Shown here in pieces: positions 15,178 through 50,500 of a stretch of 64,000 bases of DNA. This DNA comes from Mobula hypostoma (Eukaryota), in NCBI RefSeq assembly GCF_963921235.1, contig NC_086097.1, positions 163,308,001 through 163,372,000 of the forward strand, given 5' to 3'. A model generated the notes under the pieces. The model saw only the letters and a list, made by a program, of their open reading frames with translations. It did not search any database and had not been told where the DNA came from. Within the stretch, counting starts at the first letter, position 1. Each line of letters starts with the position of its first letter. The position numbers and the translations under genes are program-made.

Positions 15178-16916
15178 TTTTTTTCTATTAAGTACAATCG
15201 TGAACAATAGCCAGATCAGAAATGCTGATCAAGTCAACTAGTTCCCAAAGAGAACTCTGATAGGCCAATCAGATGGTTCACTGCTGCTCAGTGATAGAAC
15301 ACAAAAAAATCATATGTACAATTAAAAAACATTAAAAAATAGTAGAAATACTGGAGACATGATGATCATGATGAATTCTGCTGGAGAGAGACATTTATAC
15401 ACATGCTGTCCTCCATAATTCAAAGAGAGTGAAGGATAAGGTTGCAGGTTGACAAAATGTGGCAGGAGCACTTGGAACTAAAAACTAATCCCCACCGGGA
15501 GAAAACAGCACCTGTTCTCTCTGCACTGTTCTCCAGCAGTTTAAGGACTAAGTCCAGCCAGAAAATAACTCACAAGTGCTCTTGAAAGTCAGGTATTAAC
15601 CCTACCTACCAACAACCAAGCATTGCCATCCTGGTCCCCTTCATGATAGCTTATGACAAAGCATGTGACTTCCCTCCCAGAGATGATAGGTGTTAGTGCA
15701 CTCAACTCTTGAAGGCTTGGACCCCATCGTCGCAGATGTTTCCAACCACAGCATCTGGAAGGCTGTTCCAAATTCTGATAGCACAGTGAATGAAGCTTCT
15801 ATCCAGTGTGTAGATCCTCACATCAGGCATGAGCAGGCATGGATAAACTTGATCGTATGGTGCGCCATTTCTCATAAGGTGAAGGTAGCACGGCGCGAAG
15901 GTCTGCAGGGCTGTGGCTGGTGTGCATTTTATATGCACAGTAGCTGCAGCAACCAGTCATCTGCGGTGTAAACTACTGATGGCTAGTTTCTCACGAGCTG
16001 TGGCTTCATCTACACCCATAATCCTGAGAGCCTTTCTTTGAATGGAATCAAGCTGGTTGAGGACACTCTGTGAGGCATTCATCCATGATAAGCAGGCATA
16101 CTCCATGATACTTCGTACCTGGGCTTTGTAAACCATGGCTCTGCCGTCTTTGTCTAGTTTGGATGCTGCTTTCCATAGAGCTCCAAGCCTTTGTCCAGCC
16201 TTGTTTGAAATAGTGGAAAAGTGTTTATCCCACACCAACTTGCTGTCAATATTAACACCAAGGATTACTAGCTTCCTCTTTAAATCCAGCTTGCAGTTCC
16301 CAAAATACAGTTCAGGGTTAGATGGATTCCTCTTCCTAGACATCACCATTGCCTTGCACTGAGTAGGCTCAAAGGAGACATTGCAGTCGTCTGCCCAGGC
16401 TTTCATCCTGTCAAGATCCCCATACAGGCCTGCTGCCACTGTATTACTCTCTCCTGCTCTAATTGGTGCAAACAGTGTGGAGTCGTCAGCGCACAGGTAT
16501 AGCTCGTTACTGCATGCATCAACCAAGTCATCAATAAAGATGGAAAACAGAAGTGGCCCAAGTATTGAACCCTGTGGTACAGATGCATTGATGGTTAACG
16601 AATCAGAAGCCTGACCAGAGATAACAACTTTGATGGTCTGTCGCTCTGCAGCCATCTGAGCAGCTTTCCAGATATTCCTTTGGATCTCAGCTTAACACAG
16701 AGTCCATTATGCCAGACCTTGTCAAATGCTCCTTTGGTATCCAGGGCTATGACACACACTTCTCCACCTTTGTCTAAGAAGGTGTTCCACATTTGAGGTA
16801 AGGTGGTGAGGAGATCGGCTGTACTGTGATCAGGTCTAAATCCATACTGCCTACTTGAAGTTAAGTTGTTACAGAGTAGGTAGTTCTGAACTTGGTTGTG
16901 GACTGCTGCTTCCATT
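15178..16916 (-). mobile_element. 5'-truncated CR1-Zenon/Crack-like LINE (RT C-terminal half plus 3' UTR)
   Basis: QYGFR, ALDTKGAFDKVWH, VPQGSILGPLLF, CADD, YKAQVRSIMEY and IRIWNSLP motifs in ORFs 15702-16915. Clade assignment is tentative. Confidence 0.8.
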
Positions 16917-17052
16917 ATCCTGTGGAATTTGCTGTTTTGTGGCAGCAGTACAGTGCAATACCATAAAAATCACCAGAGGTTACAATAAGAAATATAAGAA
17001 AAATAATTGAATAAATAAGTAGTGCACAAAGAGAATAAAAAGATGAGGTAGT

Positions 17053-20000
17053 CATCATCATCATCATGGCTTGGCTTTGTGAATGAAGATTCAGCAACTG
17101 TCAGCAGGCTGGATGGAGAGCGAGGTGTCTCCCAGTGGAGGTTGGTTGTAGGGGATTCATAGACCGTTCTTTAGTTAGAGCTTTCAGCATTTTGGGCATC
17201 AAGGGAGAGAGGAAGAGGAGAGCCATCCGCAGTACCACCGATGCGGCAGAGAGGGCCTCAAGATGGCTGTGGCTCAAAAGAGGGGAGCCATGGAGTCATA
17301 AGTAGCTAGCCATCTGGACACAAGCTGGGGTCTGATCAGCTCCGGCTGGGTCACCTGGAGGAGGTTGTATGATGTTGAAAGACCCGAAACACCCGATGAT
17401 TCCAGGAACATCACTGAAGATGTGTCCAGAAGCATCAATAGATGTATGTACACAGTAGGAAGGGGCTGCCCACGTCTTCTGCAGGTTCACTGGTGGCTGA
17501 CGAGGCCAATACGGGACAGGTAGGTTCATCCACGGCGGCTGCATGGGAAATTCTCTTCTGGGTTTGGTGCTTCTGTGTCACGGTTCTTCCTCCTTTTCCT
17601 TTTATCCTCAATGCCAGCCCCGCGTGCGTTCTTGAAGGAGGAGACAGACTGGTGAATGGTGTGTCTCCAGGCCTCGCGATCGGAGGCTAGATTAGACCAC
17701 TGGCAATGGTCAATGTGACAGGCACCAAGGGATTTCTTCAGAGTCCTTGTACCTCTTCTTCGGTGCCCCTCTGTCATGGAGGCCAGTGGAGAGTTCACCA
17801 TACAGCACAATCTTGGGCAGCAATGAGCCTCCATCCTGGAGACGTGCCCTGCCCAGCGCAGCTGCATCTTCAACAGCATGGCCTTGATGCTGGTGACCTC
17901 TGCCTGTTCGAGAACTTCGATGTTGGTGACGAAGTCACTCCAGTGGATGTTGAGGATGGTGCGGAGGCAGCGCTGGTGGAAACGCTTAAGGAGTCGTAGG
18001 TGGTGACGGTAGGTGACCCACGACTCGGAGCCGTACAGGAGGGTAGTCAGTACAATGGCTCTGTGCATGTTGATCTTTGTGCCTTTTTTCAAATGCTTGA
18101 TGTTCCAGACTCTTTTGTACAGCCTGCCGAATGCACTGTTTGCCTTTGCCAGTCTGTTGTCAATCTCTTTGTCAATCTTGGCATCTGACGAAATGGTGCA
18201 CCCCAGGTAGCTGAACTGGTGGACTGCCTTCAGCTCTACCTCACCGATGGTGATGCAGGGAGGGTGGTAATCTTCCTGAGGTGCGGGCTGATGGAGAACT
18301 TCTGTCTTCTTCAAGCTGACTTCCAGTCCAAAGAGCTTGGCAGCCTCTGCGAAGCAGGATGTTATACACTGCAGGGCTGTCTGTGTGTGGACAACAAGGG
18401 CAGCATCATCGGCGAAGAGTATGCTCCAATGTCTTGGTATGGGACTGTAGTCGCCTCAGGCTGAACAGGCTGCCTTCAGTGCGGTATCGGATGTAAACAC
18501 CGTCCTCGTCATCAAGGTCTTCTGTGGCCCTTTCGAGCATCATGCTGAAGAAGATGGTGAAGAGAGTTGGTGCGAGGACGCAGCCTTGCTTTACTCCGTT
18601 GCCTATTGGGAAGGGTTCTGAGAGGTCATTGTTGTGTCTGACTTGGCCACTCTGATTTTCCTGTAGCTGGAAGACCATGTTGAGGAATTCTGGGGGGCAT
18701 CCCAGTCGTTCCATGATTTGCCACAGACCTTCCCTGCTCATGGTGTTGAACGCTTTGGTAAGGTCGACAAATGTTATGTACACTCTCTTGTCCTGTTCCC
18801 TACATTTCTCTTGGAGCTGCCTGAGAACAAATGCCATGTCGGTGGTGCTCCTGTTGGCTCTGAAGCCACACTGGCTCTCTGGGAGGAGTTCTTCTGCAAT
18901 GAAGGGCACCAATCTGTTCAGGAGTACTCTTACAAGGATTTTTCCTGCGATAGAGAGAAGAGTTATCTTCCAGTTGTTGGAGCAGTCGGACTTTTCCCGC
19001 TTGTTCTTATACCGGGCAATGATGACTGTGTCACGGAGGTCCTGTGGTAGTTTAGCTTGTTCCCAGCAGCAGACAAAGAACTCCTGGAATTTGTGTAACG
19101 CTGAGCCCTCATGCTTCCAAATCTCAGGTGGGATTCCATCAACTCCTGCTGCCTTGCCACTTTTCAGCTGCTCTATGGCCTTGACTGTCTCTTCTTGGGT
19201 TGGAATCTTGTCCAGTTCTGTTTTCTCTGACTGTTGGGGGAGGCAATGAATTGCTGAGTCTTGGACCATGTGGTTGGCGCTGAAGAGGGTCTGGAAATGT
19301 TCCGACCACCGGTTCAGGATGGATGCCTTGTGTGTGAAGCATGCCTGACCGTCTGCACTGTGCAAGGGACTCTGGACCTGGTGCAAAGGGCCGTACACCG
19401 CTCTCAGGGCTTCATAAAACCCTCTATAGTTACTGGTGTCTGCGCAAAGCTGAGTTCTCTTTGCGAAGTTGGTCCACCACACATTCTGAATCTCTCGAAA
19501 CTTGCACTGGAGGTTGCTGCATACAAGGCGAAAGGCTGCTTTCTTATCAGGACAAGACGGCCGAGCAAGGTGCGCTTGGAGGGCGGATCTCTTTTTCGCC
19601 AGCAATTCTTGGATCTTCTGGTTGTTTTCATCGAACCAGTCCTTGTTCTTCTTTGTGGAAAACCCTAGGACTTCTTCAGAGGTTTGCAGGATGGTGGTTT
19701 TTTGGTGTTCCCAAAACACTTCTAGAGAGGAGTCTGTAAGGAAACTGGGATCCTGAAGCCTCGACTAAAGATTCATCTGAAAGTCAGCTTTCACTTCAGC
19801 TGACTGGAGGTTGCCAACCTGAAACTTCTTCCTTGGAGCGCCACCTCTCTTTGGCTTGGGTTTGAAATGGAGACTGTTTGCAGTGGACAAGATGATGGTC
19901 AGTAAGACGTCTCGAAGGTCTCTCTGGCACACCAAGCTGTAGTCTATGAGGTGCCAATGCTTGGACCAAGAATGCATCCAGGTTGTCTTCAGACTGTCTT

Positions 20001-21018
20001 TCTGCTGGAAAATGGTGTTAGTGATGGTGAGTTGCTGCTCCGTGCAAAACTCTTAACAGAGGGCACCTGTTGTCGTTGCAGTTTCCAACACCATGTTTGC
20101 CAAGTACTCCTTTCCAGGCTTCTGAGCCTTGGCCTACTCTGGCATTGAAGTCGCCAAGAATGAAGACCTTGTTGTCCGCAGGGGCATTCCGTACGAGGTT
20201 GTGTAAAACTTGTCCTTTTCTGCAGGATCCGCCTGAAGAATGGGGGTGTACATGCTGAAGAGTGTGGCATGCTGCTTGGTTTGAAGTGGGAGGAGCATGG
20301 AGATGATGTGGTCAGAGTGATCCATTGGCAATTTTTCAAGTTTGGAGACAATGGAGTTCCTGACCATAAAGCTAACGCCAGAAAGACGTCTGTCAGTCTC
20401 TGGCTTTCCTGACCAGTAGAGGGTGTAGCCGGCGCCATGTTCTTGAAGGTTGCCTTCCTCTGGGAAGCGGACTTCAGTGAGAGCAGTGATGTCGACATTC
20501 AGTCTTGAAAGTTGATACGCAACTAGAGTGCACCGAGTTCCGGGCGACCACTCTCTGCTGTATCGAGCATGGTTCTGATGTTCCAGTATGCGAGCTTTAT
20601 TCATTGCACTCCTTGTGAGGCAGGTGTACTCCTTTTCATTTTTGTTGTTGTTTGACGCATTTGAGGATGCCCATTGACCGCGGCTACCCAACTGCGGGAA
20701 ATGGAAACGGGCTTTGGTTAGGCCACCTTTTCTAGGCCCCTCTCCGTGTGGAGCAAGCGGTGTTGTCCCTAGAGAAGGCTGCTTGGTCGTTCAGGGTGCT
20801 GCCGAATGGTATCGCCGTCTCCAGGGTCAACATCAGACAACCCATACACCTGAACCGCCTGCATGCAGGATCGGTACTGCGGCTTCCAGTGTCATCTTCC
20901 ACCTGCTGTTTTTGCCCCTTTCCCATTGCTGCAGGGCTGGAGGAATGGTCGGGGAGGATGGTCGTAGATGTGGGTGCCCGTTGTCGTTGCAGGTTTGTGA
21001 GTAAGTTTTGTAAGTAAG
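17053..21018 (-). mobile_element. Near full-length RTE-clade LINE (degenerate single ORF, APE + RT)
   Basis: APE (DITALTEVRF, GAGYTLYWSG) at 20134-20691. RT (ESQCGFR, FVDLTKAF, GVKQGCVLAPTLF) at 18406-19719. C-terminus (FSYLG, LLYGSESW, LRWAGHV) at 17526-18314. (ATG)n tail at 17053-17068. ~37-bp flanking direct repeat. Confidence 0.93.
17092..17455 (+). mobile_element. 3' fragment of a HERO (R2-superfamily, restriction-like endonuclease) LINE inserted into the RTE 3' end
   Basis: Translation from 17093: CQQAGWRARCLPVEVGCRGFIDRSLVRAFSILGIKGERKRRAIRSTTDAAERASRWLWLKRGEPWSHK*. RTE sequence resumes at 17456. Confidence 0.82.
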
Positions 21019-29574: not shown

Positions 29575-32500
29575 TTCAAAGTGCAGGGGGCAGGCCTTCA
29601 GATTCTTGGAACATTGGGATCTCTTCTGGGGGAAGTATGACCTTTTCAAAATGGACAGGTTACACCTGAACCAGAAGGGGACCAGTATCCTGGCAGGAAG
29701 GTTTAATAGAGCTGTTAGGGAGGGTTTAAACTAATTTGGCAGGGGGATGGGAACTGGAATGATAGAGGGGAGGGAGGGGAAAACAGAAATAAATCTAAGA
29801 TAGTGAGCAGTAAAGATGTCAGGAAAGGCAGGCAGGTGATGGGGCAAACTTGTAGCCATTGGGATGAGTTGCGGTGCAATAAAGTTGCAGTGCAATCAAA
29901 GCGAAAAGTACCAAATACTGGCCTTAAGGTGTTATACTTAAATGCACGCAGCATATGGAATAAGGTGGATGATCTTGTCGTACAGCTACAGATTGGCAGG
30001 TATGATATTGTGGCCATCACTGAGACGTGGCTAAAGGATGCATGTCTCTGGGAGATGAACGTCCAAGGATACACGGTGTATGAGAAGGATAGGAAGGTAG
30101 GCAGAGGGGGAGGCGTGGCTTTATTGGTAAGAAATGATATCAAATCATTAGAAAGAGGTGACATAGGATCGGGAAGTGCAGAATCTTTATGGGTTGAGCT
30201 AAGAAACCGCAGGGGTAAAAGGACCATGATGGCAGTTATACACAGGCCTCCAAACAGCTGCAGTGATGTGGACTACAAATTACAACAGGAAATAGAAAAG
30301 GCTTGTCAGAAGGGCAGTATTATGATAATTGTGGGGTATTTTAACATGAGAGTGGATTGTGAAAATCAGGTCAGCACTGGATCTCAACAGAGAGAATTTG
30401 TAGAATGTCTGTGAGAAGGCTTTTTAGAACAGCTTGTTGTTAAGCCCACTAGGGAATCAGCTGTACTGGATTGGGTATTGTGTAATGAACCAGAGGTGAT
30501 TAGAGAGATTGAGGTGAAGGAACCCTTAGGAGACAGTGATCATAACATGCTTGAGTTCACTGTGAAATTTGAAAAAGAAAAGCCGAAATCCAATGTGGCG
30601 GATTTCAGTGGAGTAAAGGAAATTACAGTGGCATGAGAGAGGAACTGGCCAAAGTCGACTGGAAAGGGACACTGGCGGGAAGGACAACAGAGCAGCAGTG
30701 GCTGGAGTTTATACGAGAAGTGAGGAAGGTGCAGGACAGGTATATTCCAAATAAGAAGATATTTTCGAATGGAAAAAGGATGTAACCGTGGCTGAGAAGA
30801 GAAGTCAAAGCCAAAGTTAAAGCAAAGGAGAGGGCATACAAGGAAGCAAAAATTAGTGGGAAGTCAGAGGATTGGGAAGTTTTTAAAAGCTTACTCAAGG
30901 AAACTAAGAAGGTCATTAAGAGGGAAAAAATGAACTATGAAAGGAAGCTAACAAATAATATCAAAGAGGATACTAAAAGCCTTTTCAAGTATATAAAGAG
31001 TAAAAGACAGGTGAGAGTAGATATAGGACCGATAGAAAATGATGCTGGAGAAATTGTAATGGGAGATAAGGAGATGGCGGAGGAACTGAACGAGTATTTT
31101 GCATCAGTCTTCACTGAGGAAGACATCAGCAGTATACCGGACACTCAAGGGTGGCAGGGAAGAGAAGTGTGCGCAGTCACAATTATGACAGAGAAAGTAC
31201 TCAGGAAGCTGAATAGTCTAAAGGTAGATAAATCTCCCGGACCAGATGGAATGCACCCTCGTGTTCTGAAGGAAGTAGCTATAGAGTTTGCGGAGGCATT
31301 AGCGATGATCTTTCAAAAGTCAATAGATTCTGGCATGGTTTCGGAGGACTGGAAGATTGCAAATGTCACTCCGCTATTTAAGAAGGGGGCAAGGAAGCAA
31401 AAAGGAAATTATAGACCTGTTGGCTTGACATCGGTGGTTGGGAAGTTGTTGAGTTGATTGTCAAGGATGAGGTTACTGTGTACCTGGAGGCATATGACAA
31501 GATAGGCAGAACTCAGCATGGATTCCTTAAAGGAAAATCCTGCCTGACAAACCTATTACAATCTTTTGAGGAAATTACAAGTAGGCTAGACAAGGGAGAT
31601 GCAGTGGATGTTGTATATTTGGATTTTCAGAAGGCCTTTGACAAGGTGCCACACATGAGGCTACTTAACAAGATAAGAGCCCATGGAATTACGGGAAAGT
31701 TACATACATGGATAGGGTGTTGGCTGATTGGCAGGAAACAGAGTGGGAATAAAGGGATCCTATTCTGGTTGGCTGTCGGTTACCAGTGGTGTTCCACAAG
31801 GGTCCGTGTTGGGGCCGCTTCTTTTTACATTGTACGTCAACGATTTGGATTATGGAATAGATAGCTTTGTGGCTAAGTTTGCTGATGATACAAAGATAGG
31901 TGGAGGGGCCAGTAGTGCTGAGGAAACAGAGTCTGCAGAGAGACTTGGATAGATTGGAAGAATGGGCAAAGAAGTGGCAAATGAAATATAATATTGGAAA
32001 GTGTATGGTTATGCACTTTGGCAGAAGAAATAAACAGGCAGACTACTATTTAAATGGGGAGAGAATTCAAAGTTCTGAGATGCAACGGGACTTGGGAGTC
32101 CTCGTGCAGGATACCCTTAAGGTTAACCTCCAGGTTGAGTTGGTGGTGAAGAAGGCGAATGCAATGTTGGCATTCATTTCTAGAGGAATAGAGTATAGGA
32201 GCAGGGATGTGATGTTGAGGCTCTATAAGGCACTGGTGAGACCTCACTTGGGATACTGTGGGCAGTTTTGGTCTCCTTATTTAAGAAAGGATGTGCTGAC
32301 GTTGGAGAAGGTACAGAGAAGATTCACTAGAATGATTCCAGGAATGAGAGGGTTAACATATGAGGAACATTTGTCCGCTCTTGGACTGTATTCCTTGGAG
32401 TTCAGAAGAATGAGGGGGGACCTCATAGAAACATTTCGAATGTTGAAAGGTATGGATAGAGTGGATGTGGCAAAGTTGTTTCCCATGATGGGGGAGTCTA

Positions 32501-32812
32501 GTACGAGAGGGCATGACTTAAGGATTGAAGGGCGCCCATTCAGAACAGAGATGCAAAGAAATTTTTTTAGCCAGAGGGTGGTGAATCTATGGAATTTGTT
32601 GCCACGGGCGGCAGTGGAGACCAAGTCATTGGGTGTATTTAAGGCAGAGATTGATAGGTATCTGAGTAGCCAGGGCATCAAAGGTTATGGTGAGAAGGCG
32701 GGGGAGTGGGACTAAGTGGGAGAATGAATCAGCTCATGATGAAATGGCAGAGCAGACTCGATGGGCCGAATGGCTGACTTCTCCTTTGTCTTATGGTCTT
32801 ATGGTCTTACGG
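29575..32812 (+). mobile_element. CR1-clade LINE (HER1-like), 5'-truncated within ORF1, near-complete ORF2 with frameshifts and stops
   Basis: ORF1 esterase tail (DRLHLNQKGTSILAGRF). APE motifs YLNARS and AITETW. RT motifs NYRPV, QHGF, LDFQKAFD, VPQGS and FADD. 3' tail (TCTTATGG)n at 32789-32812. Confidence 0.95.
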
Positions 32813-38345: not shown

Positions 38346-39140
38346 CCCCACTCCAATCATGCTGCCAGAGCCTGTCAATCCCCTTCCCCCACCCCAATCA
38401 TGCTGCCAGAGCCTGTCAATCCCCTTCCCCCACCCCAATCAATACTGCCAGAGCCTGTCAATCCCCTTCCCCCACCCCAATCAATGCTGCCAGAGCCTGT
38501 CAATCACCTCCCCCCACCCCAATCAATGCTGCCAGAGCCTGTCAATCCCCTCCCCCCACCCCAATCATGCTGCCAGAGCCTGTCAATCCCCTTCCCCCAC
38601 CCCAATCAATACTGCCAGAGCCTGTCAATCCCCTTCCCCCACCCCAATCAATACTGCCAGAGCCTGTCAATCCCCTTCCCCCACCCCAATCAATATTGCC
38701 AGAGCCTGTCAATCCCCTTCCCCCACCCCAATCAATACTGCCAGAGCCTGTCAATCCCCTTCCCCCACCCCAATCAATACTGCCAGAGCCTGTCAATCCC
38801 CTTCCCCCACCCCAATCAATATTGCCAGAGCCTGTCAATCCCCTTCCCCCACCCCAATCAATACTGCCAGATCCTGTCAATCCCCTTCCCCCACCTCAAT
38901 CAATACTGCCAGAGCCTGTCAATCCCCTTCCCCCACCCCAATCAATGCTGCCAGAGCCTGTCAATCCCCTCCCCCCACCCCAATCAATACTGCCAGAGCC
39001 TGTCAATCCCCTTCCCCCACCCCAATCAATACTGCCAGAGCCTGTCAATCCCCTTCCCCCACCCCAATCAATGCTGCCAGAGCCTGTCAATCCCCTCCCC
39101 CCACCCCAATCAATACTGCCAGAGCCTGTCAATCCCCTTC
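38346..39140. repeat. 41/42-bp C-rich minisatellite, ~19 copies
   Basis: Unit CCCCACCCCAATCAATACTGCCAGAGCCTGTCAATCCCCTTC with minor variants. Confidence 0.97.
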
Positions 39141-42116: not shown

Positions 42117-42623
42117 GTGGAAGTTGTTGCAGAGTCCAGTGAATTGAACATTTGAAGAGGCTTGTGGTGCCATTGGCAATAGAATTGGAACTGGAATTTA
42201 TTATTGTCACACATACCAAAGTACAGTGAAAAACTTGTTTTGTATGGCATCCATGCAGAGCACTTCATTACAACGGTCTATTGAGGTTGCACAAGAAAAA
42301 GCTAGTGGGCAACCCAGTAGTGTAACACTTATTTATTTAGAGATACAGGCCCTTCCAGCCCATCGAGCAGTGCCGCCCACAACCCACCGATTAACCTTCG
42401 TCTAATCACAGGACAACTTACAGGAACCAATTCAGCTACTAACCGATATGTTTTTGGACTGTGGGAGGAAACAAGAACACCTGCCAGGAACCTGGACTGT
42501 CATGTGACCGGCAACAATGAATATAGAATTGAGCCAGGTTTTATAAACAAACGAACATTTATTAAACTCTGCTCAATAATAAAAAAAAACAAAAATCTTA
42601 ACCGGAAGTAAACTGCTATGCGG

Positions 42624-43469
42624 TGTTACGTACCCCGTAACTGGGTTGCCAAACCAGCAGAAATGGATCACTCAGTTGGAGTCTGGAGTACTAGAACTAA
42701 GAAAGTTTTATTACAGAAACAAGCAACACAGTAATCGAAAGGATAATAAATGCAACAGTTCAGTGATGATAAACACACATGTGCACAGAATTAAGATAAC
42801 AGCATCAATCAAGCTCTATCGTTGTCTAGGGGTAAATGACCAATTTCAAAATGACTCAAAGTTCAGTCCAGTTTAGTAGTTCAGTTCGCAGTAATCGTTG
42901 CCATGGCGGTGGACAATGTGGGGGAAGAGAGAGATAGAATAGGAACAACTCATCATTCAGAACGGCTTCACTCACAGACCAGCAGGATGGCTCACAGACC
43001 AGCGAGATGGCTCACAAACAGCTTTTTGGGTGGGTCCTTGGTGATGTCACCTGAGGTCACCGACTGTGACCCCTCCTCCAGATGCGGTCGATCCTCTGCA
43101 GTGAACCCGGCACCCAGGCAAGGGCGGACACACACCGGGTTCCCGCTGATCGTACCTTTCCACCCACTCGTGAGAAGCGTACCGCTTCCAGGGTCTCGTT
43201 ACCTCGGGTGGCGTGTGTGTGTCTTAGCGAACCTGTCCCTTTTTATCCCCCTGCTGGGGTATCGCCTGTCCATCACTTCAAACAGTTCAAAGGGGGGAGC
43301 CGCTCCAGACAGCTCTTCCTCCCACATCCCCTCATTACACATCCCCAGACGCTGCTCCATTGTTCCTTATCTCTCCTTCCCCTGAGGGCAGGTGGCAGAC
43401 CAACTGCTGATGCCACTGATGCTAGCCCAGGCCAGCAAACATCTTAATTTTATGTGTATTCTCGTAACA
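42624..43469 (-). repeat. 3' LTR (846 bp) of the Gmr1-like element
   Basis: Adjacent to the PPT. AATAAA on the minus strand at 42707-42712. Matches the 5' LTR except for two C/T differences seen by eye. Confidence 0.95.
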
Positions 43470-43481
43470 CTTCCCCCCTTT
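43470..43481 (-). promoter_or_regulatory. Polypurine tract
   Basis: Minus strand AAAGGGGGGAAG directly before the TG of the 3' LTR. Confidence 0.9.
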
Positions 43482-43641
43482 AAGGATTTTTACCGGGAGG
43501 TAAAAATTACAAACATGACTACATTATCTGATACATACACAATATACATCTTTAACAGTTATTTAGCTAATACAGAGAATTTGAAGCTGTCAATACCTTG
43601 ACAGACAGTCATCACATTTTCTGTTCCTTTTACACGTGTTA

Positions 43642-46629
43642 TTAATAATCCCTTAGACCAGGCTCCAACTCAGCAAACTTCATAGTGGCCAAAAACACTG
43701 ATGAATTGCGACCAATGTAACCTCTCATCTGGTTTTGTCCCGGACCACAACAACAAGGGTCGTCCCATTCCGACTCAATTTTCCCTCGCAAGGGCTTAGT
43801 AGGAGGGGGACGGGTATTGACCGCAGAGTTATTGCAAAACTTCCTGCAGTACCCCACCATCTCCAAAAGCCTTCTGAGGGCCCTCTTGTCTGTCGGGGTT
43901 GGGAGGTCAGCGATAGCCTGCACTGTAGCTTGCATCACTGCCAGCTGCCCCTGTGTCACCACAATTCCCAGGTAAGTGACATTCGCGTGGCCGAATTCAT
44001 TTTTTCCAAGGTTCACTATCAAGCTGGCTTCAGACAGCCGTGTTAAATTGCCAATACACACCTCTGTGTTCATCAGCCCTTTAGTCACTGAATTACTCAA
44101 AAAATATGGGTGTTGTTTACTTGGCCGCCCTATTGTAACCGACATAACCCAACGTCCCAGTTCTTTGCATTTCCTCGGGACAATCAAACACATGGGTGCG
44201 AGTCGTTTAATTACTCCTTTGGGGATTAAGGGAGAGACCTTATCAGTAGACCTGGCCAAAACAATAGCCTTCTCCCATCTGACCGATCCCATCCTAATCT
44301 TTTCAAAATGGTTTTTTCCTCTTATCAAGGGGCCCCTAGCTTCATTGATTTCCACGCTAACACCGACTAGGTTTGTTAGCATATCAAAAGCCGGTGACCG
44401 TCTCAGTTCGCGTCGGTCATGATCAATAACATTTTTCCCCCTGGGCAGCCGGTAACTCTCTTTCATGATTCCACCAACTGTTTCCTCCAGCACCGCAAAA
44501 TGTCCACCGGGGGGTACCTCGTGGGCCATGTTAAAAACCTCATCCCCATAACTCTTTTGCACCACCCCCCACTCCTCATCTGCGGATGCTGTACTTGATT
44601 TCCCTTTCTTCCTTAGCACTTCCTCATCCGCACAATAGCTTGTCAAGGCTGTGTCAGAGAGAGCGGTCTCGGCAAAAACCATCAGCCCCTCGTCTCGCTC
44701 CTGCGTCTGCACAAATTCTTTCCTGGCTACTGCTACGTCCGTCCCAGCTCCCTCACTACCTCTTATCTCACTACACCCTGTCTCATACAAGGTTGGCAGA
44801 AATGTTTCAGCCAAATTCACCATCGCGGGCGGGGCCTCCATGCTGGCAGGCTGACCCGTCAATCTCACGACTGGGAACACGATTCCTCCGGCGATGTCAT
44901 TACCGAGCAAGACTTCCACGTCTTTCATCGGTAATTCGGACCTCACCCCGATCGTGACTAGTCCAGAGACCAGGTTGCTCTGTAAATGTATCTGGTGCAA
45001 AGGGACTGACTCTGTCCCTTCCCCAACACCTTTGACCTCTACCTCCCCAGTCTGGGTCTCTGAGCTAAACTCTAATACACTCTTCAGTATTAGTGACTGA
45101 CACGCTCCCGTGTCTCTCCAGATCCGCACTGGAACTGGTTTTAACCTCTTTTTCACTGACACCAGTCCGGCCGAGATAAACCTCTCGCGCCCTTCCTGGA
45201 CTTTTTCAGACCTGTCCTTCCCTAGCGGTTCGCTTAACAGCTCAATACAGCCATTCAAAATTTCCGCTTTTCCTTTCCCCGTCTCCTTCCTTGGGGCAAA
45301 GCACCTGGACGCAAAGTGTCCGACTTTCCCACAATTATAACAGACAACCCCAGGAGACTTCCTACCAGACTGCTCCCGGTCTACCTTATCCTTTTCACTA
45401 GTCCCCGGCTTACTTTCTGACTTTTCCGGCGGACTCTCCCCGCCGTCCTGACTACCCTTCTGGTAGCCTTTACTCGGGGCAAACTTCATTTTATGCGTCA
45501 ACGCATACTCATCCGCTAACTTAGCAGTTGCGGCTAACGTGGCTGCCTCTTTCTCATCGAGGTAGGGTCTCATACCCTCAGGGACACAACCTTTAAACTG
45601 CTCAATCAGAATCAGCTGCAGCAGTCTGTCATAATCCCCCTCTACCCCTTTCGAGGCGCACCAACGCTCACAATATGTTTGCATCTCACGGGCAAACTCC
45701 AAATACGTGCGGTCCCACCGCTTCCTCGCATTCCGGAACCTCTGCCGGTATGCCTCCGGGACCAACTCATAAATCCTGAGGATGGCCTCTTTCACCACCT
45801 CATACTTCTGGGCATCTTCCGGGGATAAAGCGGAGTAAGCTTGTTGGGCCTTCCCTTTCAGTACACTCTGAAGTAAGACAACCCACTTATCCCTCGGCCA
45901 TTCCTGACTTATGGCCACTTTTTCGAAATGGAGAAAGTACCGATCCACATCGGTATCGTCAAATGGGGGAACCAGCCTAACCTCCTGGGTCGCCCGGAAC
46001 CCTCCACCTTGGTTCGGCACGAGCCCCTGCTCGGCCCTTATCTTTAACTTCTCCAGCTCAAATTCCCTTTCCCTCTGTTTCTCCTCTCTCTCCAACTGTC
46101 TGTCCCTCTCTCTCTCTTCTCTCTCCAACTGTCTGTCCCTCTCTCTCTCTTCTCTCTCCAACTGTCTTTCTCTCTCTTGCCTTTCTACCTCTTTCTCTCT
46201 CTCCCGCCTTTCTAACTCTCTCTCTTTCTCCTGCCTTTCTAACTCTCTCTCTTTCTCCTGCCTTTCTAACTCTCTCTCTTTCTCCTGCCTTTCTAACTCT
46301 CTCTCTTTCTCCTGCCTTTCTAACTCTCTCTCTTTCTCCTGCCTTTCTAACTGCCGTACCCGGAACTCGTGCTCGAGTCTCAGTTTTTCAAGCTGTACCT
46401 GTACCGCGTCTCCAGCAGGTTTTTCAATAGACACCTCCCCCAGCTCACCTTGGGGAAACACACCTTTAGATACATAGTGCTCTACAATAGCTCTGTGTAT
46501 CTCCTCTCTCCTCATTGTCGACTTCACCTTAGCAAGATTCACCCGTTTTGCCACAGCTATCAATTCCGATTTCCTGGCATCCTCTAATGCCTCCAAGGTC
46601 GGCGCCTTTATAAATTCCTCAACCTCCAT
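43642..46629 (-). CDS. 995-aa Gag-protease polyprotein with in-frame remnants of integrase and reverse transcriptase (catalytic cores absent)
   Basis: Coiled-coil repeats aa 95-190. Capsid/SCAN-like region aa ~219-378 (VPPF...YELVPEAYRQRFR...LILIEQF...LADEY). CCHC knuckle CYNCGKVGHFASRC aa 430-443. Aspartic protease RDTGA aa 505-509 plus LLGND aa 574-578. Integrase zinc-finger half AHEVPPGGH aa 702-710. RT start KQHPY aa 838-842. RT thumb LSEASLIVNLGKNEFG...YLG...LRRLLEMVGYCRKFC aa 865-932. No YxDD, DDE or RNase H motifs. Confidence 0.92.
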   Translation of the reverse strand: MEVEEFIKAPTLEALEDARKSELIAVAKRVNLAKVKSTMRREEIHRAIVEHYVSKGVFPQGELGEVSIEKPAGDAVQVQLEKLRLEHEFRVRQLERQEKERELERQEKERELERQEKERELERQEKERELERQEKERELERREREKEVERQERERQLEREERERDRQLEREERERDRQLEREEKQREREFELEKLKIRAEQGLVPNQGGGFRATQEVRLVPPFDDTDVDRYFLHFEKVAISQEWPRDKWVVLLQSVLKGKAQQAYSALSPEDAQKYEVVKEAILRIYELVPEAYRQRFRNARKRWDRTYLEFAREMQTYCERWCASKGVEGDYDRLLQLILIEQFKGCVPEGMRPYLDEKEAATLAATAKLADEYALTHKMKFAPSKGYQKGSQDGGESPPEKSESKPGTSEKDKVDREQSGRKSPGVVCYNCGKVGHFASRCFAPRKETGKGKAEILNGCIELLSEPLGKDRSEKVQEGRERFISAGLVSVKKRLKPVPVRIWRDTGACQSLILKSVLEFSSETQTGEVEVKGVGEGTESVPLHQIHLQSNLVSGLVTIGVRSELPMKDVEVLLGNDIAGGIVFPVVRLTGQPASMEAPPAMVNLAETFLPTLYETGCSEIRGSEGAGTDVAVARKEFVQTQERDEGLMVFAETALSDTALTSYCADEEVLRKKGKSSTASADEEWGVVQKSYGDEVFNMAHEVPPGGHFAVLEETVGGIMKESYRLPRGKNVIDHDRRELRRSPAFDMLTNLVGVSVEINEARGPLIRGKNHFEKIRMGSVRWEKAIVLARSTDKVSPLIPKGVIKRLAPMCLIVPRKCKELGRWVMSVTIGRPSKQHPYFLSNSVTKGLMNTEVCIGNLTRLSEASLIVNLGKNEFGHANVTYLGIVVTQGQLAVMQATVQAIADLPTPTDKRALRRLLEMVGYCRKFCNNSAVNTRPPPTKPLRGKIESEWDDPCCCGPGQNQMRGYIGRNSSVFLATMKFAELEPGLRDY
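46213..46347 (-). repeat. 27-bp coding tandem repeat (ERQEKEREL x5) in the Gag coiled coil
   Basis: Plus-strand unit ctgcctttctaactctctctctttctc repeated. A 33-bp unit (LEREERERDRQ x2) follows in the protein. Confidence 0.9.
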
Positions 46630-46705
46630 TTCTGCTGTTTGTCTTTTCTTTCTTTCGGGAATTTTAACCCAATCAATTTACTCCGTCCCAAATTTAGCGT
46701 TCAAA

Positions 46706-46724
46706 ATCGCGGACGAGAACCCCA
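46706..46724 (-). promoter_or_regulatory. Primer-binding site, tRNA-Pro-like
   Basis: Minus strand reads TGGGGTTCTCGTCCGCGAT, 4 nt inside the 5' LTR end. Canonical tRNA-Pro PBS is TGGGGGCTCGTCCGGGAT. Confidence 0.8.
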
Positions 46725-46728
46725 CTTA

Positions 46729-47574
46729 TGTTACGTACCCCGTAACTGGGTTGCCAAACCAGCAGAAATGGATCACTCAGTTGGAGTCTGGAGTACTAGA
46801 ACTAAGAAAGCTTTATTACAGAAACAAGCAACACAGTAATCGAAAGGATAATAAATGCAACAGTTCAGTGATGATAAACACACATGTGCACAGAATTAAG
46901 ATAACAGCATCAATCAAGCTCTATCGTTGTCTAGGGGTAAATGACCAATTTCAAAATGACTCAAAGTTCAGTCCAGTTTAGTAGTTCAGTTCGCAGTAAT
47001 CGTTGCCATGGCGGTGGACAATGTGGGGGAAGAGAGAGATAGAATAGGAACAACTCATCATTCAGAACGGCTTCACTCACAGACCAGCAGGATGGCTCAC
47101 AGACCAGCGAGATGGCTCACAAACAGCTTTTTGGGCGGGTCCTTGGTGATGTCACCTGAGGTCACCGACTGTGACCCCTCCTCCAGATGCGGTCGATCCT
47201 CTGCAGTGAACCCGGCACCCAGGCAAGGGCGGACACACACCGGGTTCCCGCTGATCGTACCTTTCCACCCACTCGTGAGAAGCGTACCGCTTCCAGGGTC
47301 TCGTTACCTCGGGTGGCGTGTGTGTGTCTTAGCGAACCTGTCCCTTTTTATCCCCCTGCTGGGGTATCGCCTGTCCATCACTTCAAACAGTTCAAAGGGG
47401 GGAGCCGCTCCAGACAGCTCTTCCTCCCACATCCCCTCATTACACATCCCCAGACGCTGCTCCATTGTTCCTTATCTCTCCTTCCCCTGAGGGCAGGTGG
47501 CAGACCAACTGCTGATGCCACTGATGCTAGCCCAGGCCAGCAAACATCTTAATTTTATGTGTATTCTCGTAACA
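46729..47574 (-). repeat. 5' LTR (846 bp) of the Gmr1-like element
   Basis: Adjacent to the PBS, TG...CA ends with a 7-bp inverted repeat, TATA-like GATAAAAA on the minus strand at ~47345-47352. Confidence 0.95.
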
Positions 47575-50500
47575 GCGGCCATTTAACAAACCACCACTCA
47601 GTACTAGTTTTTAAAGCAGTAAATGCGAAAACAGTCTTAAAGTGGTAAATTCAAACACAGTTCTTTGAATGGTAAATTTGAAAGTCCAAGAGATTTATAC
47701 AGTCAATTAGGAGAGACTTTCCTCGAAGACACGACGTTACTGTCAATCCCAGCCAGAACCTGCCTTGTCCACAGGATTCACGACAAGAGAAATAAAATGG
47801 TTTAAAGGCATTGACCTTTTTCTCTGTAGAATAGACTAGATTCTGCACAAACTTTCTGCTGCTTTTAGCAGAGGTTATCTCATCCAGGTCACTCTTACTT
47901 GAATGAATTCAATAATGGTTGACCCTCACCAAAATCGCCAAACGACTCCTTCAGGTTCCCGTCTTCACTCTCCAATATTACTGAAAAGGTACATCAATAA
48001 ATCTGGCAGCTATTGGTGAAACTGCCGGCCCAACATTTCTGTACCTTACAATAGAAAGTAAAACTCCGTTTTAAAACTATACTGCGTCATGAGATTAATA
48101 AGCAGTGTAGCGGAATATCTGACTGACGATCTAACTGAAAGCTAACTGCATCACCAGGGGACTACACTTATATACCTGGTGAGAACAGGTCATCACGTGA
48201 TCTCACATCGGCAGGAAAATTACACCATGTGACCTCCGCAAGACCATTACATCATCCTCATAAGCCAATCACAAGATATCCATGAAGTATGTAACAGGAC
48301 TTACTTCTGTCACTGTCTGTATGTTCTCTCCATGGTCACTTGGGAGCCTCCAGGTGCTGTACATTCCAAAGATGTGCAGGTTAATAGGTTAATTGGTCAG
48401 CACGGGCTCATTGGGGCAGAAGGGCCTGTTACCATGCTGTATCTCTAAATCTAAAGTTCAAAGTAAAGTTTATTTTCAGAGTACATACATGTCACCACAT
48501 ACAACACTGAGATTCTTTTTACCGTGGACATACTCAGCAAATCTAGAGAACGTTAACTCTAAGCAGGATCAATGGATAACAAACTGTGCAAATGGAAATA
48601 TAAATGAGTAACGGCAGTATGAAATAACAAGAAAAACAATCCTTAAAGTGAGATCATTGGTTGTGGGAACACCATGAATAGAATGAGTATAGTTATTCTC
48701 ATTTGCTCAAGGGCCTGATGGTTGAGGGGGTGTCCTGAGGCACCTGATGGCAGCAGTGAGAAAATTCAGTAGCCTTATCGCAGCTGGGTAGAAGTTGCCC
48801 TTGATCCTGGGGCTTTTAGGTTTTTTGTATCTTCTGCTGGAAGAAAGACAGAGAATGTTCGGTGTGGGTGGGGTCTTTGATTATTTTGGCTACTTTACCA
48901 GCGAGGCAGCGAAAAATGTAGACAATGTCCAGGGAAGGGAGGCTGGCTTCCGTGATGGGTTGAGTTGAGTCTACTGGAGTCATTCATTCCAGTTGACGAT
49001 TTGTACATCCCTGTGACAATTTCGGTCAGGTCATTAAATTTCTTTCGAGAAAATGCTGCAAATGCTGGCAGTCTGAAGTAAAAAAGCAAAATGCTGGAAA
49101 TCCACACCAGGTCATTTTTTTTGAAAGAGAAACAGAATTAATGTTTAGGTTGATGGCTTATTCTCAAAATTGGGAAAAGTTAGAATTGAAATAAGGGTTT
49201 TCTCTGATTGATTCATTTCTAACTTTTCCCAATTCTGATGAAAAGCCATTCATTTGAAACATCACCTTTCCTCTCATCACAGATGCTGCACGACCTTATG
49301 CATATTTCCAACATTTTCTGTTTCTGTTTCATTGAACATTTTTGTGTAGTACATCATGGACTATCAGTCCAGGGATTGGAACCAAAATAAGTTTGTTTTT
49401 GGTCTATTTACCTATATCCTTGCTCCTTGCTCTTGTTGCCAACTGAGACCTATCCAGTGGAAAAAAGGTTGTCACTACCCTGAAAACTTTTCCACCAGAA
49501 CTGTGGTGTTTTTCCTTGAAATCAAGCAGTAGGCTTTCTGTAATGTTAACGACTTCTCAACGTGCAGCCAAAATACACCTCTCTCTTAAAGCATGCTGGC
49601 TGCCTTTACTTAACACAGCAAAAGCCACTGGGTCCCTGCTGCTTTGTGCTCCCAGTAATCAGTGGTATCAGGCTGGCAGCATACGGCAATCATTGAAAAC
49701 AGCAGGCAGAATGCAACCTTCTAATTGAGTGGGATCGTTAAATTAAATCACATACAGTTTAATGAAAATGAGGAAATACACATATGAGGATAAAATGGCC
49801 TTCAGACCGACAAAGGAGTGTTAATATGGGTATAAATTTGTCTCTGGTGTCCACAGGACCTCAGGAGCTGTGCAGTTTCAAAAAATTGTTTGGTTTAGTT
49901 TTAAGGTAAGTCCATGTGTTGACTGTAAAGGTTGGGTAGGATTTGTGTGATTACTGAATCAGTACACAGTAAAACAGCTGCACGCTCACTCAAGTTTTAT
50001 CAGCACTTAAAATCACTTTTTAGAGCAAATGAAATTTACCTTCTTTCATTCAAAGTAGCCATTCCCTACTCTGAATAAAATGTCCCAAAGATACATATAA
50101 TTAGATAGAAATGGAATTATGGATATGGACCCAAACAGTGCACGTTGATGTTTATTTTTTTCACTGTCGTGATCTTTAGTTAAATTGCCTTCCTGCCTCA
50201 AGCCCTTTCAACCAACCATCTAAATAGCTGTTGCATGAGTTAGAGGTTACTTCAACAATGAACACAACATGATGGACTCAATGGTATGGGTGGGAGTCAT
50301 GAGGGCTGGTGAAACCCCCGGTCAATGAGGTCAGAAATCTGTGCAATTCCGGAAATTGAGACCCAAAAGTCAAACCTGTGATTAGTGAGCCCTGGGCTTG
50401 TAACCCCAGTGGTTGGCCAAATCTGGAGAGAAATACTTATGGTCAAATTCCAGCACTTGACAAGTTCAGAGGTAGAAGCCTGAAGGTTGAAGACCGAAGT

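What the first reader, a model, noticed from the sequence alone, without database searches (positions are those of the whole stretch)
42624..47574. Recently mobilised 'Gag-protease-only' LTR element whose pol catalytic cores were removed in frame
Seen in sequence: complete cis structure (near-identical LTRs, exact TSD, PBS, PPT) and one stop-free 995-aa ORF. Gag, the CCHC knuckle and the DTG protease look intact. The last ~350 aa is a mosaic: the H-H half of the integrase zinc finger with the C-C lost (aa 702-742), the INT/RT linker up to KQHPY (aa ~785-842), then the RT thumb (aa ~861-960). The DDE core, the YxDD palm and RNase H are all missing. Established knowledge: integrase-before-RT order marks Gmr1-like gypsy elements. 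Inference: about three deletions and strong amino-acid drift without a single stop or frameshift, in a copy that has just retrotransposed, point to a propagating parasitic lineage. It would make and process its own capsid while borrowing RT and IN from a helper, with the vestigial pol tail kept open (for example to avoid NMD, or as a co-assembly or recruitment domain).
Basis: partly seen in the sequence, partly recalled or inferred. Interest (0 to 1): 0.85.

Follow-up and report, generated by a model that had tools for sequence, protein, structure and literature searches.

The report
Pol-deleted Gag-protease retrotransposon in devil ray
This is a young copy of a devil-ray (Mobula) LTR retrotransposon family that still encodes its capsid protein and protease but has lost its reverse-transcriptase and integrase cores, so it must borrow them from another element. 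This lifestyle is already known in wheat and mouse elements, which makes the find neat but not new in kind.

Summary
On the minus strand lies a 4,951-bp element with 846-bp LTRs (2 mismatches), a 4-bp target duplication (GCGG), a tRNA-Pro-like primer site, a G-rich polypurine tract and one 995-aa ORF.

The ORF has an intact Gag (SCAN, CCHC) and a retropepsin-fold protease. After that come only pol vestiges, all in the ORF's frame:
- the H-H half of the integrase zinc finger;
- a probable IN-RT linker ending in KQHPY;
- the end of the RT palm with YxDD decayed to CIGN, followed by the RT thumb;
- a faint RNase H trace.

The nearest autonomous relatives have IN before RT, which is the Gmr1-like order.

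At least 11 annotated Mobula hypostoma proteins from other loci share every junction, and 8 reach the same last residue. The deletions are therefore a family trait and not local decay.

Among young copies, shared amino-acid variants are about 5 times denser after the protease than in Gag-protease. The tail's sequence therefore looks unconstrained.

Selection for an open frame in the tail is suggested but unproven. In its favour are the in-frame deletions and the absence of stops despite drift. Against it, an older subfamily shares a 2-nt frameshift.

No helper element was found. The verdict is a new member of a known kind (semi-autonomous LTR element).

The parts
42620..42623 (.). Target-site duplication, left copy (GCGG)
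   Evidence: Read directly from the sequence. Autonomous relative L005 also has a 4-bp TSD.
42624..43469 (-). 3' LTR (846 bp, TGTTACG...CGTAACA). An AATAAA lies at LTR position 758 (window 42707-42712).
   Evidence: 99.76% identical to the other LTR, with mismatches at 42706 and 43031. AATAAA position.
43470..43481 (-). Polypurine tract AAAGGGGGGAAG, abutting the 3' LTR
   Evidence: Read from the sequence. Relatives have similar G-rich tracts.
43642..46629 (-). Single 995-aa ORF: Gag, protease and a vestigial pol
   Evidence: The ORF starts 99 nt after the 5' LTR and stops 172 nt before the 3' LTR.
46108..46352 (-). 27-bp coding tandem repeat (ERQEKEREL units) in the N-terminal, charged-repeat part of Gag
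   Evidence: Copy number differs between sibling copies.
45490..45759 (-). SCAN-type capsid C-terminal domain (aa 291-380)
   Evidence: Pfam PF02023, E 1.4e-12.
45301..45345 (-). CCHC zinc knuckle of the nucleocapsid (aa 429-443)
   Evidence: Pfam PF00098, E 5e-6. Matches to retroviral NC chains in PDB.
44833..45168 (-). Retropepsin-type aspartic protease (aa 488-599; DTG at aa 506-508; LLGND at aa 574-578)
   Evidence: 42-53% identical to the protease of 28 autonomous elements, with the invariant R-D-T and G-N-D residues kept. AF2 model pLDDT 83. All 50 Foldseek matches listed are retroviral or Ddi1 proteases, probability 0.97-1.0, TM 0.39-0.53.
44560..44832 (-). PR-IN linker (aa 600-690), shortened by small in-frame deletions compared with older subfamilies
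   Evidence: Aligns to autonomous profile positions 574-707 together with the next part. Indels.
44410..44559 (-). Integrase zinc-finger remnant (aa 691-740): the H-H half is kept and the C-C positions are lost
   Evidence: Alignment to P0008 and P0010 integrase H2C2.
44146..44409 (-). Stretch of uncertain origin, probably the poorly conserved IN-RT linker (aa 741-828). The junction where about 340 profile positions (rest of the zinc finger, DDE core, IN C-terminal domain) are missing lies at its upstream edge.
   Evidence: Only weak matches. Sibling P0003 aa 742-828 aligns to profile positions 1061-1145 (E 0.005). Local alignments score 54-64 against a shuffle mean of 35, sd 5.7, max 56.
44101..44145 (-). 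Pre-RT motif (aa 829-843, ...GRPSKQHPY). Directly after it about 130 aa of RT fingers and palm are missing.
   Evidence: Matches the profile motif vdvgdakpikqhpY and P0010 1141-1170.
44047..44058 (-). Dead vestige of the RT YxDD motif (CIGN, aa 858-861), followed by an 18-aa in-frame gap
   Evidence: Aligns to YIDD of P0010. Identical in 11 sibling proteins.
43753..44100 (-). End of the RT palm plus the RT thumb (aa 844-959)
   Evidence: 45% identical to P0010 1300-1432. Profile E 3e-29. Matches Ty3 RT 235-312.
43642..43752 (-). 36-aa tail plus stop codon. Faint trace of the RNase H 'TDH..L' region (YIGRNSSVFL).
   Evidence: Weak alignment to P0010 1522-1544, E 0.18. The same tail and last residue occur in 8 siblings.
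46699..46724 (-). Primer-binding-site-like stretch TGGGGTTCTCGTCCGCGATTTTGAAC, 4 nt after the 5' LTR
   Evidence: Read from the sequence. Resembles the PBS of L001, L004 and L005 (TGGGGGCTC...CCGGGA...). The tRNA-Pro assignment is from memory.
46729..47574 (-). 5' LTR (846 bp)
47575..47578 (.). Target-site duplication, right copy (GCGG)

Best explanation
This is a recently inserted copy of a semi-autonomous Gmr1-like Ty3/gypsy LTR retrotransposon family of Mobula rays.

Shown here:
- It keeps all the cis signals needed for reverse transcription and integration: LTRs, PBS and PPT.
- It encodes its own Gag (capsid with SCAN-type C-terminal domain, CCHC nucleocapsid) and an apparently intact retropepsin.
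- Several in-frame deletions have removed the integrase core, most of the RT fingers and palm, and nearly all of RNase H. The surviving YxDD position is mutated to CIGN.
- The same deleted structure is present at a dozen or more loci.

Inferred:
- Its RNA is packaged into particles built partly from its own Gag. It is copied and integrated by RT/RNase H and IN supplied in trans by a still unidentified autonomous Gmr1-like element.
- The vestigial pol tail has no sequence-dependent function, since its amino-acid sequence drifts about 5 times faster than Gag-protease.
- In the successful lineage the reading frame of the tail has probably been preserved. The likeliest reason is that a stop about 1.2 kb upstream of the normal one would harm the RNA, for example through long-3'-UTR nonsense-mediated decay or loss of a cis effect of translation. 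This last step is the weakest.
For: - Cis structure and youth. CpG o/e is 0.55-0.76 in the element against 0.24 in the flanks.
- Domains present and absent.
- Mapping to autonomous P0010 (SCAN, H2C2, rve, IN-C, RVT_1, RNase H in that order).
- An autonomous-element profile finds pol homology only in the ORF's frame and nothing for the rve core or the RT fingers/palm (positions ~708-1117 and ~1146-1296).
- Family: 17 annotated M. hypostoma loci on at least 13 sequences. Thirteen share junction 1, 11 share junction 2 plus CIGN plus the 18-aa gap, and 8 share the tail.
- Selection pattern: private variants are spread fairly evenly (3.3-11.3 per 1000 residues across the main regions; higher in the repeat and, through P0002's frameshifted end, in the tail). 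Shared variants number 5 per 400 aa in Gag core plus protease against 24 per 395 aa after the protease.
- Thumb identity to autonomous elements is 0.47, against about 0.59 expected for an element with this Gag-protease divergence.
- Frame: P(no stop in 395 codons) is 0.02 at K = 0.10. The small deletions that spread (9+, 7, 4 and 6 aa) are all in frame.
- Precedents: wheat GAG-Pro-only Sabrina_SA and WHAM (PMC9744471); mouse IAP 1-delta-1 (PMC6466679).
Against: - No autonomous partner was found among annotated Mobula proteins. The genome could not be searched, because sibling DNA was not retrievable.
- No synonymous-site data exist, so the Gag-protease versus tail contrast is relative only.
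- The sibling set comes from gene models of at least 547 aa or from cluster members. It is therefore biased towards open frames.
- P0003 and P0004 share a 2-nt deletion that truncates the tail at about aa 893, yet sit on different chromosomes. An open tail is therefore not strictly required for copying.
- The PBS differs at 2-3 positions from the vertebrate tRNA-Pro 3' end as I remember it, and Mobula tRNAs could not be checked.
- Expression and protease activity are untested.
Confidence: 0.8

Rival explanations
1. It is the same non-autonomous element, but the open pol tail is a historical accident. The deletions and the burst are recent enough that no stop or frameshift has yet hit the master copy, and frame has no selective value.
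For: - The older subfamily P0003/P0004 carries a shared 2-nt frameshift in the tail at two loci.
- Several young copies have private frameshifts there: P0002, P0005, P0006.
- The tail's amino-acid sequence looks unconstrained.
- The window was picked because its ORF is open, and the sibling set is ORF-biased.
- P(no stop) is still 0.13 at K = 0.05.
Against: - At least three large and four small propagated deletions are all in frame.
- The thumb has lost about 20% of its expected identity without a stop. If the whole tail drifted alike, that gives P of about 0.02 before indels are counted.
- Eight siblings end at the same residue.
Confidence: 0.35
2. The pol remnant is a functional protein domain, for example a docking or co-assembly module that recruits the helper's Gag-Pol or RT, and it is kept for its sequence.
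For: - The RT thumb segment is still recognisable (E 3e-29).
- The mouse IAP 1-delta-1 gag-pol fusion protein acts in cis to promote retrotransposition (PMC6466679).
Against: - Shared amino-acid variants are about 5 times denser in the tail than in Gag-protease.
- Thumb identity to autonomous elements is lower than for any intact element (0.47 against a minimum of 0.53).
- The tail keeps shrinking through further deletions.
- A subfamily without the last ~100 aa was copied.
Confidence: 0.08
3. The deletions are post-insertion decay or an assembly error at this one locus, in an otherwise autonomous family.
For: None found.
Against: Identical junctions, CIGN and the 18-aa gap appear in 11 other proteins from other loci. 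The LTRs are 99.76% identical, which leaves too little time for four or more large deletions in situ.
Confidence: 0.01
4. It is a domesticated Gag-protease host gene, like PEG10/RTL or SCAN-domain genes, and not a mobile element.
For: The Gag-protease ORF is conserved. NCBI models name some copies as host genes.
Against: The locus has intact LTRs, TSD, PBS and PPT. There are many near-identical copies on different chromosomes. Copy-number variation and private frameshifts are typical of a TE family.
Confidence: 0.02

Closest known systems
Gmr1-like clade of Ty3/gypsy LTR retrotransposons (Gmr1 of Atlantic cod; IN placed before RT; source of the vertebrate SCAN domain). Clade description is from my own knowledge.
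   Same: - The Gag carries a SCAN-type capsid C-terminal domain.
- The nearest full-length homologues have the order PR, IN, RT, RNase H.
- The remnants in the window keep that order.
- It shares TGT..GTAACA LTR termini, a tRNA-Pro-like PBS, a G-rich PPT and a 4-bp TSD with autonomous relatives L004 and L005.
   Different: It lacks the IN core, the RT fingers and palm, and RNase H, so it cannot be placed on an RT tree and cannot move by itself.
Wheat and barley RLG_Sabrina_SA and RLG_WHAM 'semi-autonomous' gypsy elements, with RLG_Wilma as helper (PMC9744471)
   Same: These are LTR elements whose only intact ORF is GAG plus protease. RT and INT are absent, and the families amplify alongside an autonomous partner.
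   Different: They are plant elements of a different gypsy clade with thousands of copies, and a partner is known. No in-frame vestigial pol continuing the ORF is described for them, whereas here the ORF runs on through about 395 codons of pol debris.
Mouse IAP 1-delta-1 elements (PMC6466679)
   Same: A vertebrate LTR element with an internal in-frame deletion that creates a fusion ORF. It is non-autonomous and mobilised in trans, yet is the most active subtype. The fusion protein helps in cis.
   Different: It is a betaretrovirus-like ERV. One 1.9-kb deletion removes part of gag and part of pol, whereas here Gag and protease are complete and several deletions hit IN, RT and RNase H.
ETn/MusD, LARD/TRIM and BARE2/BARE1 pairs of non-autonomous and autonomous LTR elements
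   Same: Trans-mobilisation of a defective LTR element by a coding-competent relative.
   Different: ETn, LARD and TRIM have no coding capacity. BARE2 lacks functional Gag but keeps pol, which is the opposite division of labour.
Other ORF-preserving deleted Gmr1-like elements seen here: L001/P0055, L002/P0074 and P0059, from unidentified marine eukaryotes
   Same: Gag-protease is joined in frame to a pol fragment: RNase H, an RT thumb piece or the rve core respectively. L001 has TGTTATG..CGTAACA LTRs and a tRNA-Pro-like PBS.
   Different: The breakpoints and hosts are different, so these are independent events. They are known only from short metagenome contigs.

Membership tests
Structurally intact LTR retrotransposon insertion | Two near-identical direct LTRs with TG...CA termini | tested here: met
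   846 bp each, 844/846 identical, TGTTACG...CGTAACA
Structurally intact LTR retrotransposon insertion | Target-site duplication flanking the LTRs | tested here: met
   GCGG on both sides. A 4-bp match alone has a chance probability of 1/256.
Structurally intact LTR retrotransposon insertion | PBS next to the 5' LTR and PPT next to the 3' LTR | tested here: met
   PPT AAAGGGGGGAAG. The PBS-like 26-mer resembles the PBS of relatives. An exact match to a Mobula tRNA was not testable.
Gmr1-like clade of Ty3/gypsy | Integrase encoded upstream of reverse transcriptase | tested here: met
   The IN zinc-finger remnant (aa 691-740) precedes the RT remnant (aa 829-959). The closest full-length homologues P0010 and P0032 show H2C2-rve before RVT_1-RNase H.
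Gmr1-like clade of Ty3/gypsy | Gag with SCAN-like capsid C-terminal domain | tested here: met
   PF02023, E 1.4e-12
Gmr1-like clade of Ty3/gypsy | Placement inside the clade on an RT or IN phylogeny | not tested
   The RT palm and IN core are absent, and no tree was built. All significant homologues with pol have the Gmr1-like domain order.
Non-autonomous / semi-autonomous LTR retrotransposon | Lacks catalytic RT and/or IN | tested here: met
   No rve, RVT_1 or RNase H by Pfam. The autonomous-element profile finds nothing for the rve core or the RT fingers/palm (positions ~708-1117 and ~1146-1296) in any frame; only the short kqhpY motif lies between. YxDD reads CIGN.
Non-autonomous / semi-autonomous LTR retrotransposon | The same defective structure is present in several copies at different sites | tested here: met
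   11-13 sibling proteins share the junctions, and their loci lie on different chromosome-scale sequences. Tested at protein level only.
Non-autonomous / semi-autonomous LTR retrotransposon | An autonomous partner with matching LTR ends, PBS and packaging region | not testable with these tools
   Mobula DNA was not retrievable. No annotated Mobula protein with a related IN or RT was seen.
Non-autonomous / semi-autonomous LTR retrotransposon | The retained ORF (Gag-protease) is under purifying selection | tested here: inconclusive
   Shared variants are 5 per 400 aa in Gag-protease against 24 per 395 aa in the tail. This fits constraint on Gag-protease, but no dN/dS was possible.
Domesticated gag-derived host gene | Single-copy, LTR-less, syntenic locus | tested here: not met
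   The locus has LTRs, TSD, PBS and PPT, and the family is multi-copy.

The most novel reading that the evidence does not exclude
In single-ORF (Gmr1-like) retrotransposons, a non-autonomous lineage may be under selection only for an uninterrupted reading frame through its dead pol, not for the sequence of that region. The frame would serve to keep the ribosome running to near the 3' LTR, giving NMD evasion or a cis effect of translation. Such parasites would then shrink only by in-frame deletions. The independent in-frame Gag-protease-to-pol-fragment fusions in other taxa (L001, L002, P0059) would be further cases of the same rule.
Probability: 0.35. Interest if true: 0.6.

Novelty: new member of a known kind. 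Interest (0 to 1): 0.4.

Why it matters
It adds a vertebrate (cartilaginous fish) Gmr1-like example to the small set of 'semi-autonomous' LTR elements that make their own capsid and protease while borrowing RT and IN. The clearest descriptions so far come from wheat.

If the frame-only constraint on the dead pol tail is real, it gives a clean natural system for asking why retroelement RNAs need to be translated to their end. It also shows how parasites of parasites evolve.

Practically, RefSeq models of these copies are named as host genes, for example 'metastasis-associated in colon cancer protein 1 isoform X1'. They should be flagged as transposon ORFs.

Tried and rejected
No dN/dS, LTR comparison or insertion-site check was therefore possible.
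- A metagenome scan for relatives found none.
- There is no second copy or solo LTR in the window and no tRNA gene in the window.
- Global hmmalign misplaced the thumb. The comparison was redone with pairwise alignments.
- Out-of-frame pol remnants were looked for and not found.
- Three searches for a Mobula helper found none: the whole ORF, the tail and the Hypanus IN core. The last list is truncated and length-limited, so this negative result is weak.
- Literature searches found no description of such elements in elasmobranchs or in Gmr1-like elements.
- A structure prediction of the tail was considered and dropped as uninformative.
Full report
**What is there**

The element lies on the minus strand at 42624-47574. 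Its two LTRs (42624-43469 and 46729-47574) are 846 bp each and differ at two positions, 42706 and 43031. The second mismatch is a CpG-to-TpG change. The LTRs begin TGTTACG and end CGTAACA and are flanked by the 4-bp duplication GCGG.

In element orientation the 5' LTR is followed by TAAG and then TGGGGTTCTCGTCCGCGATTTTGAAC. The 3' LTR is preceded by AAAGGGGGGAAG. A single AATAAA sits at LTR position 758. CpG observed/expected is 0.55-0.76 inside the element against 0.24 in the flanks, as expected for a recent arrival in a methylated genome.

At an assumed rate of 1-2.5e-9 per site per year, two differences in 846 bp correspond to roughly 0.5-1.2 million years. The age would be greater if ray mutation rates are slower. 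This estimate is an inference.

There is no other copy or solo LTR in the window.

**The ORF**

One 995-aa ORF (43642-46629, minus strand) starts 99 nt after the 5' LTR and stops 172 nt before the 3' LTR. Pfam sees SCAN (aa 291-380) and a CCHC knuckle (aa 429-443) and nothing else at E<1.

The protease is not recognised by Pfam, nor by a profile search of PDB sequences. The evidence for it is indirect:
- The segment aa 488-599 is 42-53% identical to the same segment of 28 autonomous relatives.
- It keeps the residues that are invariant in the clade, R-D-T of RDTG and G-N-D within LLGND.
- An AlphaFold model built on that alignment (pLDDT 83) matches only retroviral and Ddi1 aspartic proteases in the PDB. 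Foldseek probability is 0.97-1.0 for the 50 matches listed, with modest TM-scores of 0.39-0.53.

**Mapping the pol debris**

The closest full-length homologues are 1,450-1,700 aa (for example P0010 and P0032). Their domain order is SCAN, H2C2 zinc finger, rve, IN C-terminal SH3, RVT_1, RNase H. Integrase comes before RT, which is the Gmr1-like order.

Against P0010 the ORF aligns as follows:
- **aa 3-726** match P0010 1-749. This covers Gag, protease, the linker and the first (H-H) half of the zinc finger.
- **Up to aa 740**, the alignment continues against the Hypanus protein P0008. Where P0008 reads YCKRC the window reads HDRRE, so the Cys pair is gone.
- **aa 741-828** have only weak, position-consistent similarity to the poorly conserved IN-RT linker.
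- **aa 829-843** carry the pre-RT motif ...PSKQHPY.
- **aa 844-959** match P0010 1300-1432 at 45% identity. P0010's YIDD aligns to CIGN (aa 858-861), and an 18-aa gap follows.
- **The last 36 aa** have at best a trace of the RNase H TDH region.

Compared with an autonomous element, the lineage has therefore lost:
- about 340 positions of integrase;
- about 130 aa of RT fingers and palm;
- 18 aa after YxDD;
- most of RNase H.

A profile built from 33 autonomous elements was searched against all three sense frames of the internal region. It finds homology only in the ORF's frame, as does tblastn. Two details need correction: the YxDD site is decayed rather than deleted, and there are more than three deletions.

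**A family, not a local accident**

The database search returned Mobula hypostoma proteins 88-98% identical to the ORF. Cluster look-ups added more. In total there are 17 annotated loci on at least 13 different sequences, plus three shorter, more diverged models in M. birostris.

Of these siblings:
- thirteen contain junction 1 exactly as in the window;
- eleven contain the KQHPY junction, CIGN and the 18-aa gap;
- eight run to the same last residue.

The window's own ORF is not in the collection, so it is a further copy. The 'would refute' condition that the deletions are unique to this locus is therefore not met. The DNA of the siblings could not be fetched, so insertion sites, LTRs and synonymous changes remain unchecked.

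**Selection**

Among 12 young copies, private amino-acid variants are spread fairly evenly. These are mostly post-insertion mutations. They occur at 3.3-11.3 per 1000 residues across the main regions. The rate is higher in the repeat region and in the tail, where P0002's frameshifted end inflates it.

Variants shared by two or more copies reflect changes made in replicating lineages. They number 5 in the 400 aa of Gag core plus protease but 24 in the 395 aa after the protease. This is what purifying selection on Gag-protease and near-neutral drift of the tail would give. It speaks against a sequence-dependent role for the tail.

Consistently, the thumb remnant is 47% identical on average to autonomous thumbs. 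An intact element with the same Gag-protease divergence shows about 59%, and no intact element falls below 53%.

**Is the frame kept open?**

Evidence for:
- All large deletions are in frame.
- Four smaller deletions separate the young lineage from the older subfamilies P0003, P0004 and P0007 (9 or more, 7, 4 and 6 aa). All are in frame as well.
- If the roughly 20% excess amino-acid change of the thumb reflects neutral drift of the whole 395-codon region (K about 0.1), a stop-free outcome has probability about 0.02 from substitutions alone.

Evidence against:
- P0003 and P0004 are 89% identical to each other and lie on different chromosomes. They share a 2-nt deletion at about aa 893. Their common tail, AAGSDASYSAGYR, is exactly the +2 reading of the window's DNA. 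A lineage with a truncated tail was therefore copied at least once.
- Other truncated siblings (P0002, P0005, P0006) are private frameshifts in the tail, as expected for dead copies.

I rate frame selection as plausible, at roughly one in two given the element model, but not shown.

**Mechanism**

The best reading is a semi-autonomous element. It supplies Gag and protease and all cis signals, and depends on an autonomous Gmr1-like element for RT/RNase H and IN. No such helper was seen among annotated Mobula proteins. This is weak negative evidence only.

The cis features are those of the clade. Autonomous relatives L004 and L005 and the small deleted element L001 share the following with it:
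- TGT..GTAACA LTR ends;
- a PBS of the form TGGGGGCT...CCGGGA, which I recognise from memory as the complement of the tRNA-Pro 3' end;
- a G-rich PPT;
- in L005, a 4-bp TSD.

The window's PBS deviates at 2-3 positions from the vertebrate tRNA-Pro sequence as I remember it. This could not be checked against Mobula tRNAs.

**Comparison with known systems**

GAG-Pro-only 'semi-autonomous' gypsy families (RLG_Sabrina_SA, RLG_WHAM) that co-evolve with an autonomous partner are described in wheat (PMC9744471). The mouse IAP 1-delta-1 subtype has an in-frame deletion giving a gag-pol fusion ORF. It is non-autonomous yet the most active subtype, and its fusion protein acts in cis (PMC6466679).

The Mobula family combines features of both, in a different clade and host. 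I found no description of it in literature searches. It is a new member of a known kind.

Independent in-frame Gag-protease-to-pol-fragment fusions in unrelated marine eukaryote contigs (P0055/L001, P0074/L002, P0059) hint that this outcome recurs in the clade. Those too are seen only because they are ORFs.

**Verdict**

The main interpretation, a propagating Gag-protease-only parasite of a Gmr1-like element, is supported. The 'tail kept open' idea is suggestive but unproven, and the co-assembly-domain idea is disfavoured. Interest is moderate.

Noticed in passing
window 46108-46352: A 27-bp tandem repeat inside gag encodes about 8 ERQEKEREL units. The number of units differs between sibling copies: P0001 lacks 29 aa here, and P0125 is 9 aa longer overall with the full repeat stretch aligned.
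   Followed up: partly
window 38346-39140: A 42-bp minisatellite with 19 copies and 96% matches. It creates spurious ~300-aa ORFs on the plus strand.
   Followed up: no
window 15957-20691 (-) and 29803-32715 (+): Remnants of non-LTR (LINE-type) retrotransposons. ORFs hit the RVT_1 and Exo_endo_phos (APE endonuclease) Pfam families.
   Followed up: partly
L001:1-3594; L002:1-3054: Small Gmr1-like elements from marine metagenome contigs have ORFs that join Gag-protease in frame to a pol fragment (RNase H in L001, an RT thumb piece in L002). L001 is a collapsed LTR-plus-internal unit with a 189-bp LTR (TGTTATG..CGTAACA) and the PBS TGGGGGCTCGTGTCCGGGAT.
   Followed up: partly
proteins P0009, P0011, P0014, P0027 (Hemitrygon akajei, Hypanus sabinus): These stingray Gag-protease proteins carry a second partial SCAN-like stretch (profile positions ~270-320) after the protease. 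This suggests a different rearranged derivative in Dasyatidae.
   Followed up: no
ORF aa 844, 863, 870, 875, 883, 949 across sibling proteins: Shared variants among young copies are distributed in combinations that do not fit one tree. Recombination between co-packaged RNAs or gene conversion would produce this pattern.
   Followed up: no
proteins P0001, P0127, P0132, P0133: RefSeq gene models containing this transposon ORF are named as host genes (MACC1 isoform, UBE2G2 isoform, PPM1L isoform, trichohyalin-like). These are probably mis-annotations or chimeric models.
   Followed up: no
window 42903-43385 and 47008-47490 (+): Each LTR contains a 160-aa ATG ORF, plus an overlapping 121-aa ORF, antisense to the element. 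No homology was checked, and they are most likely chance ORFs.
   Followed up: no
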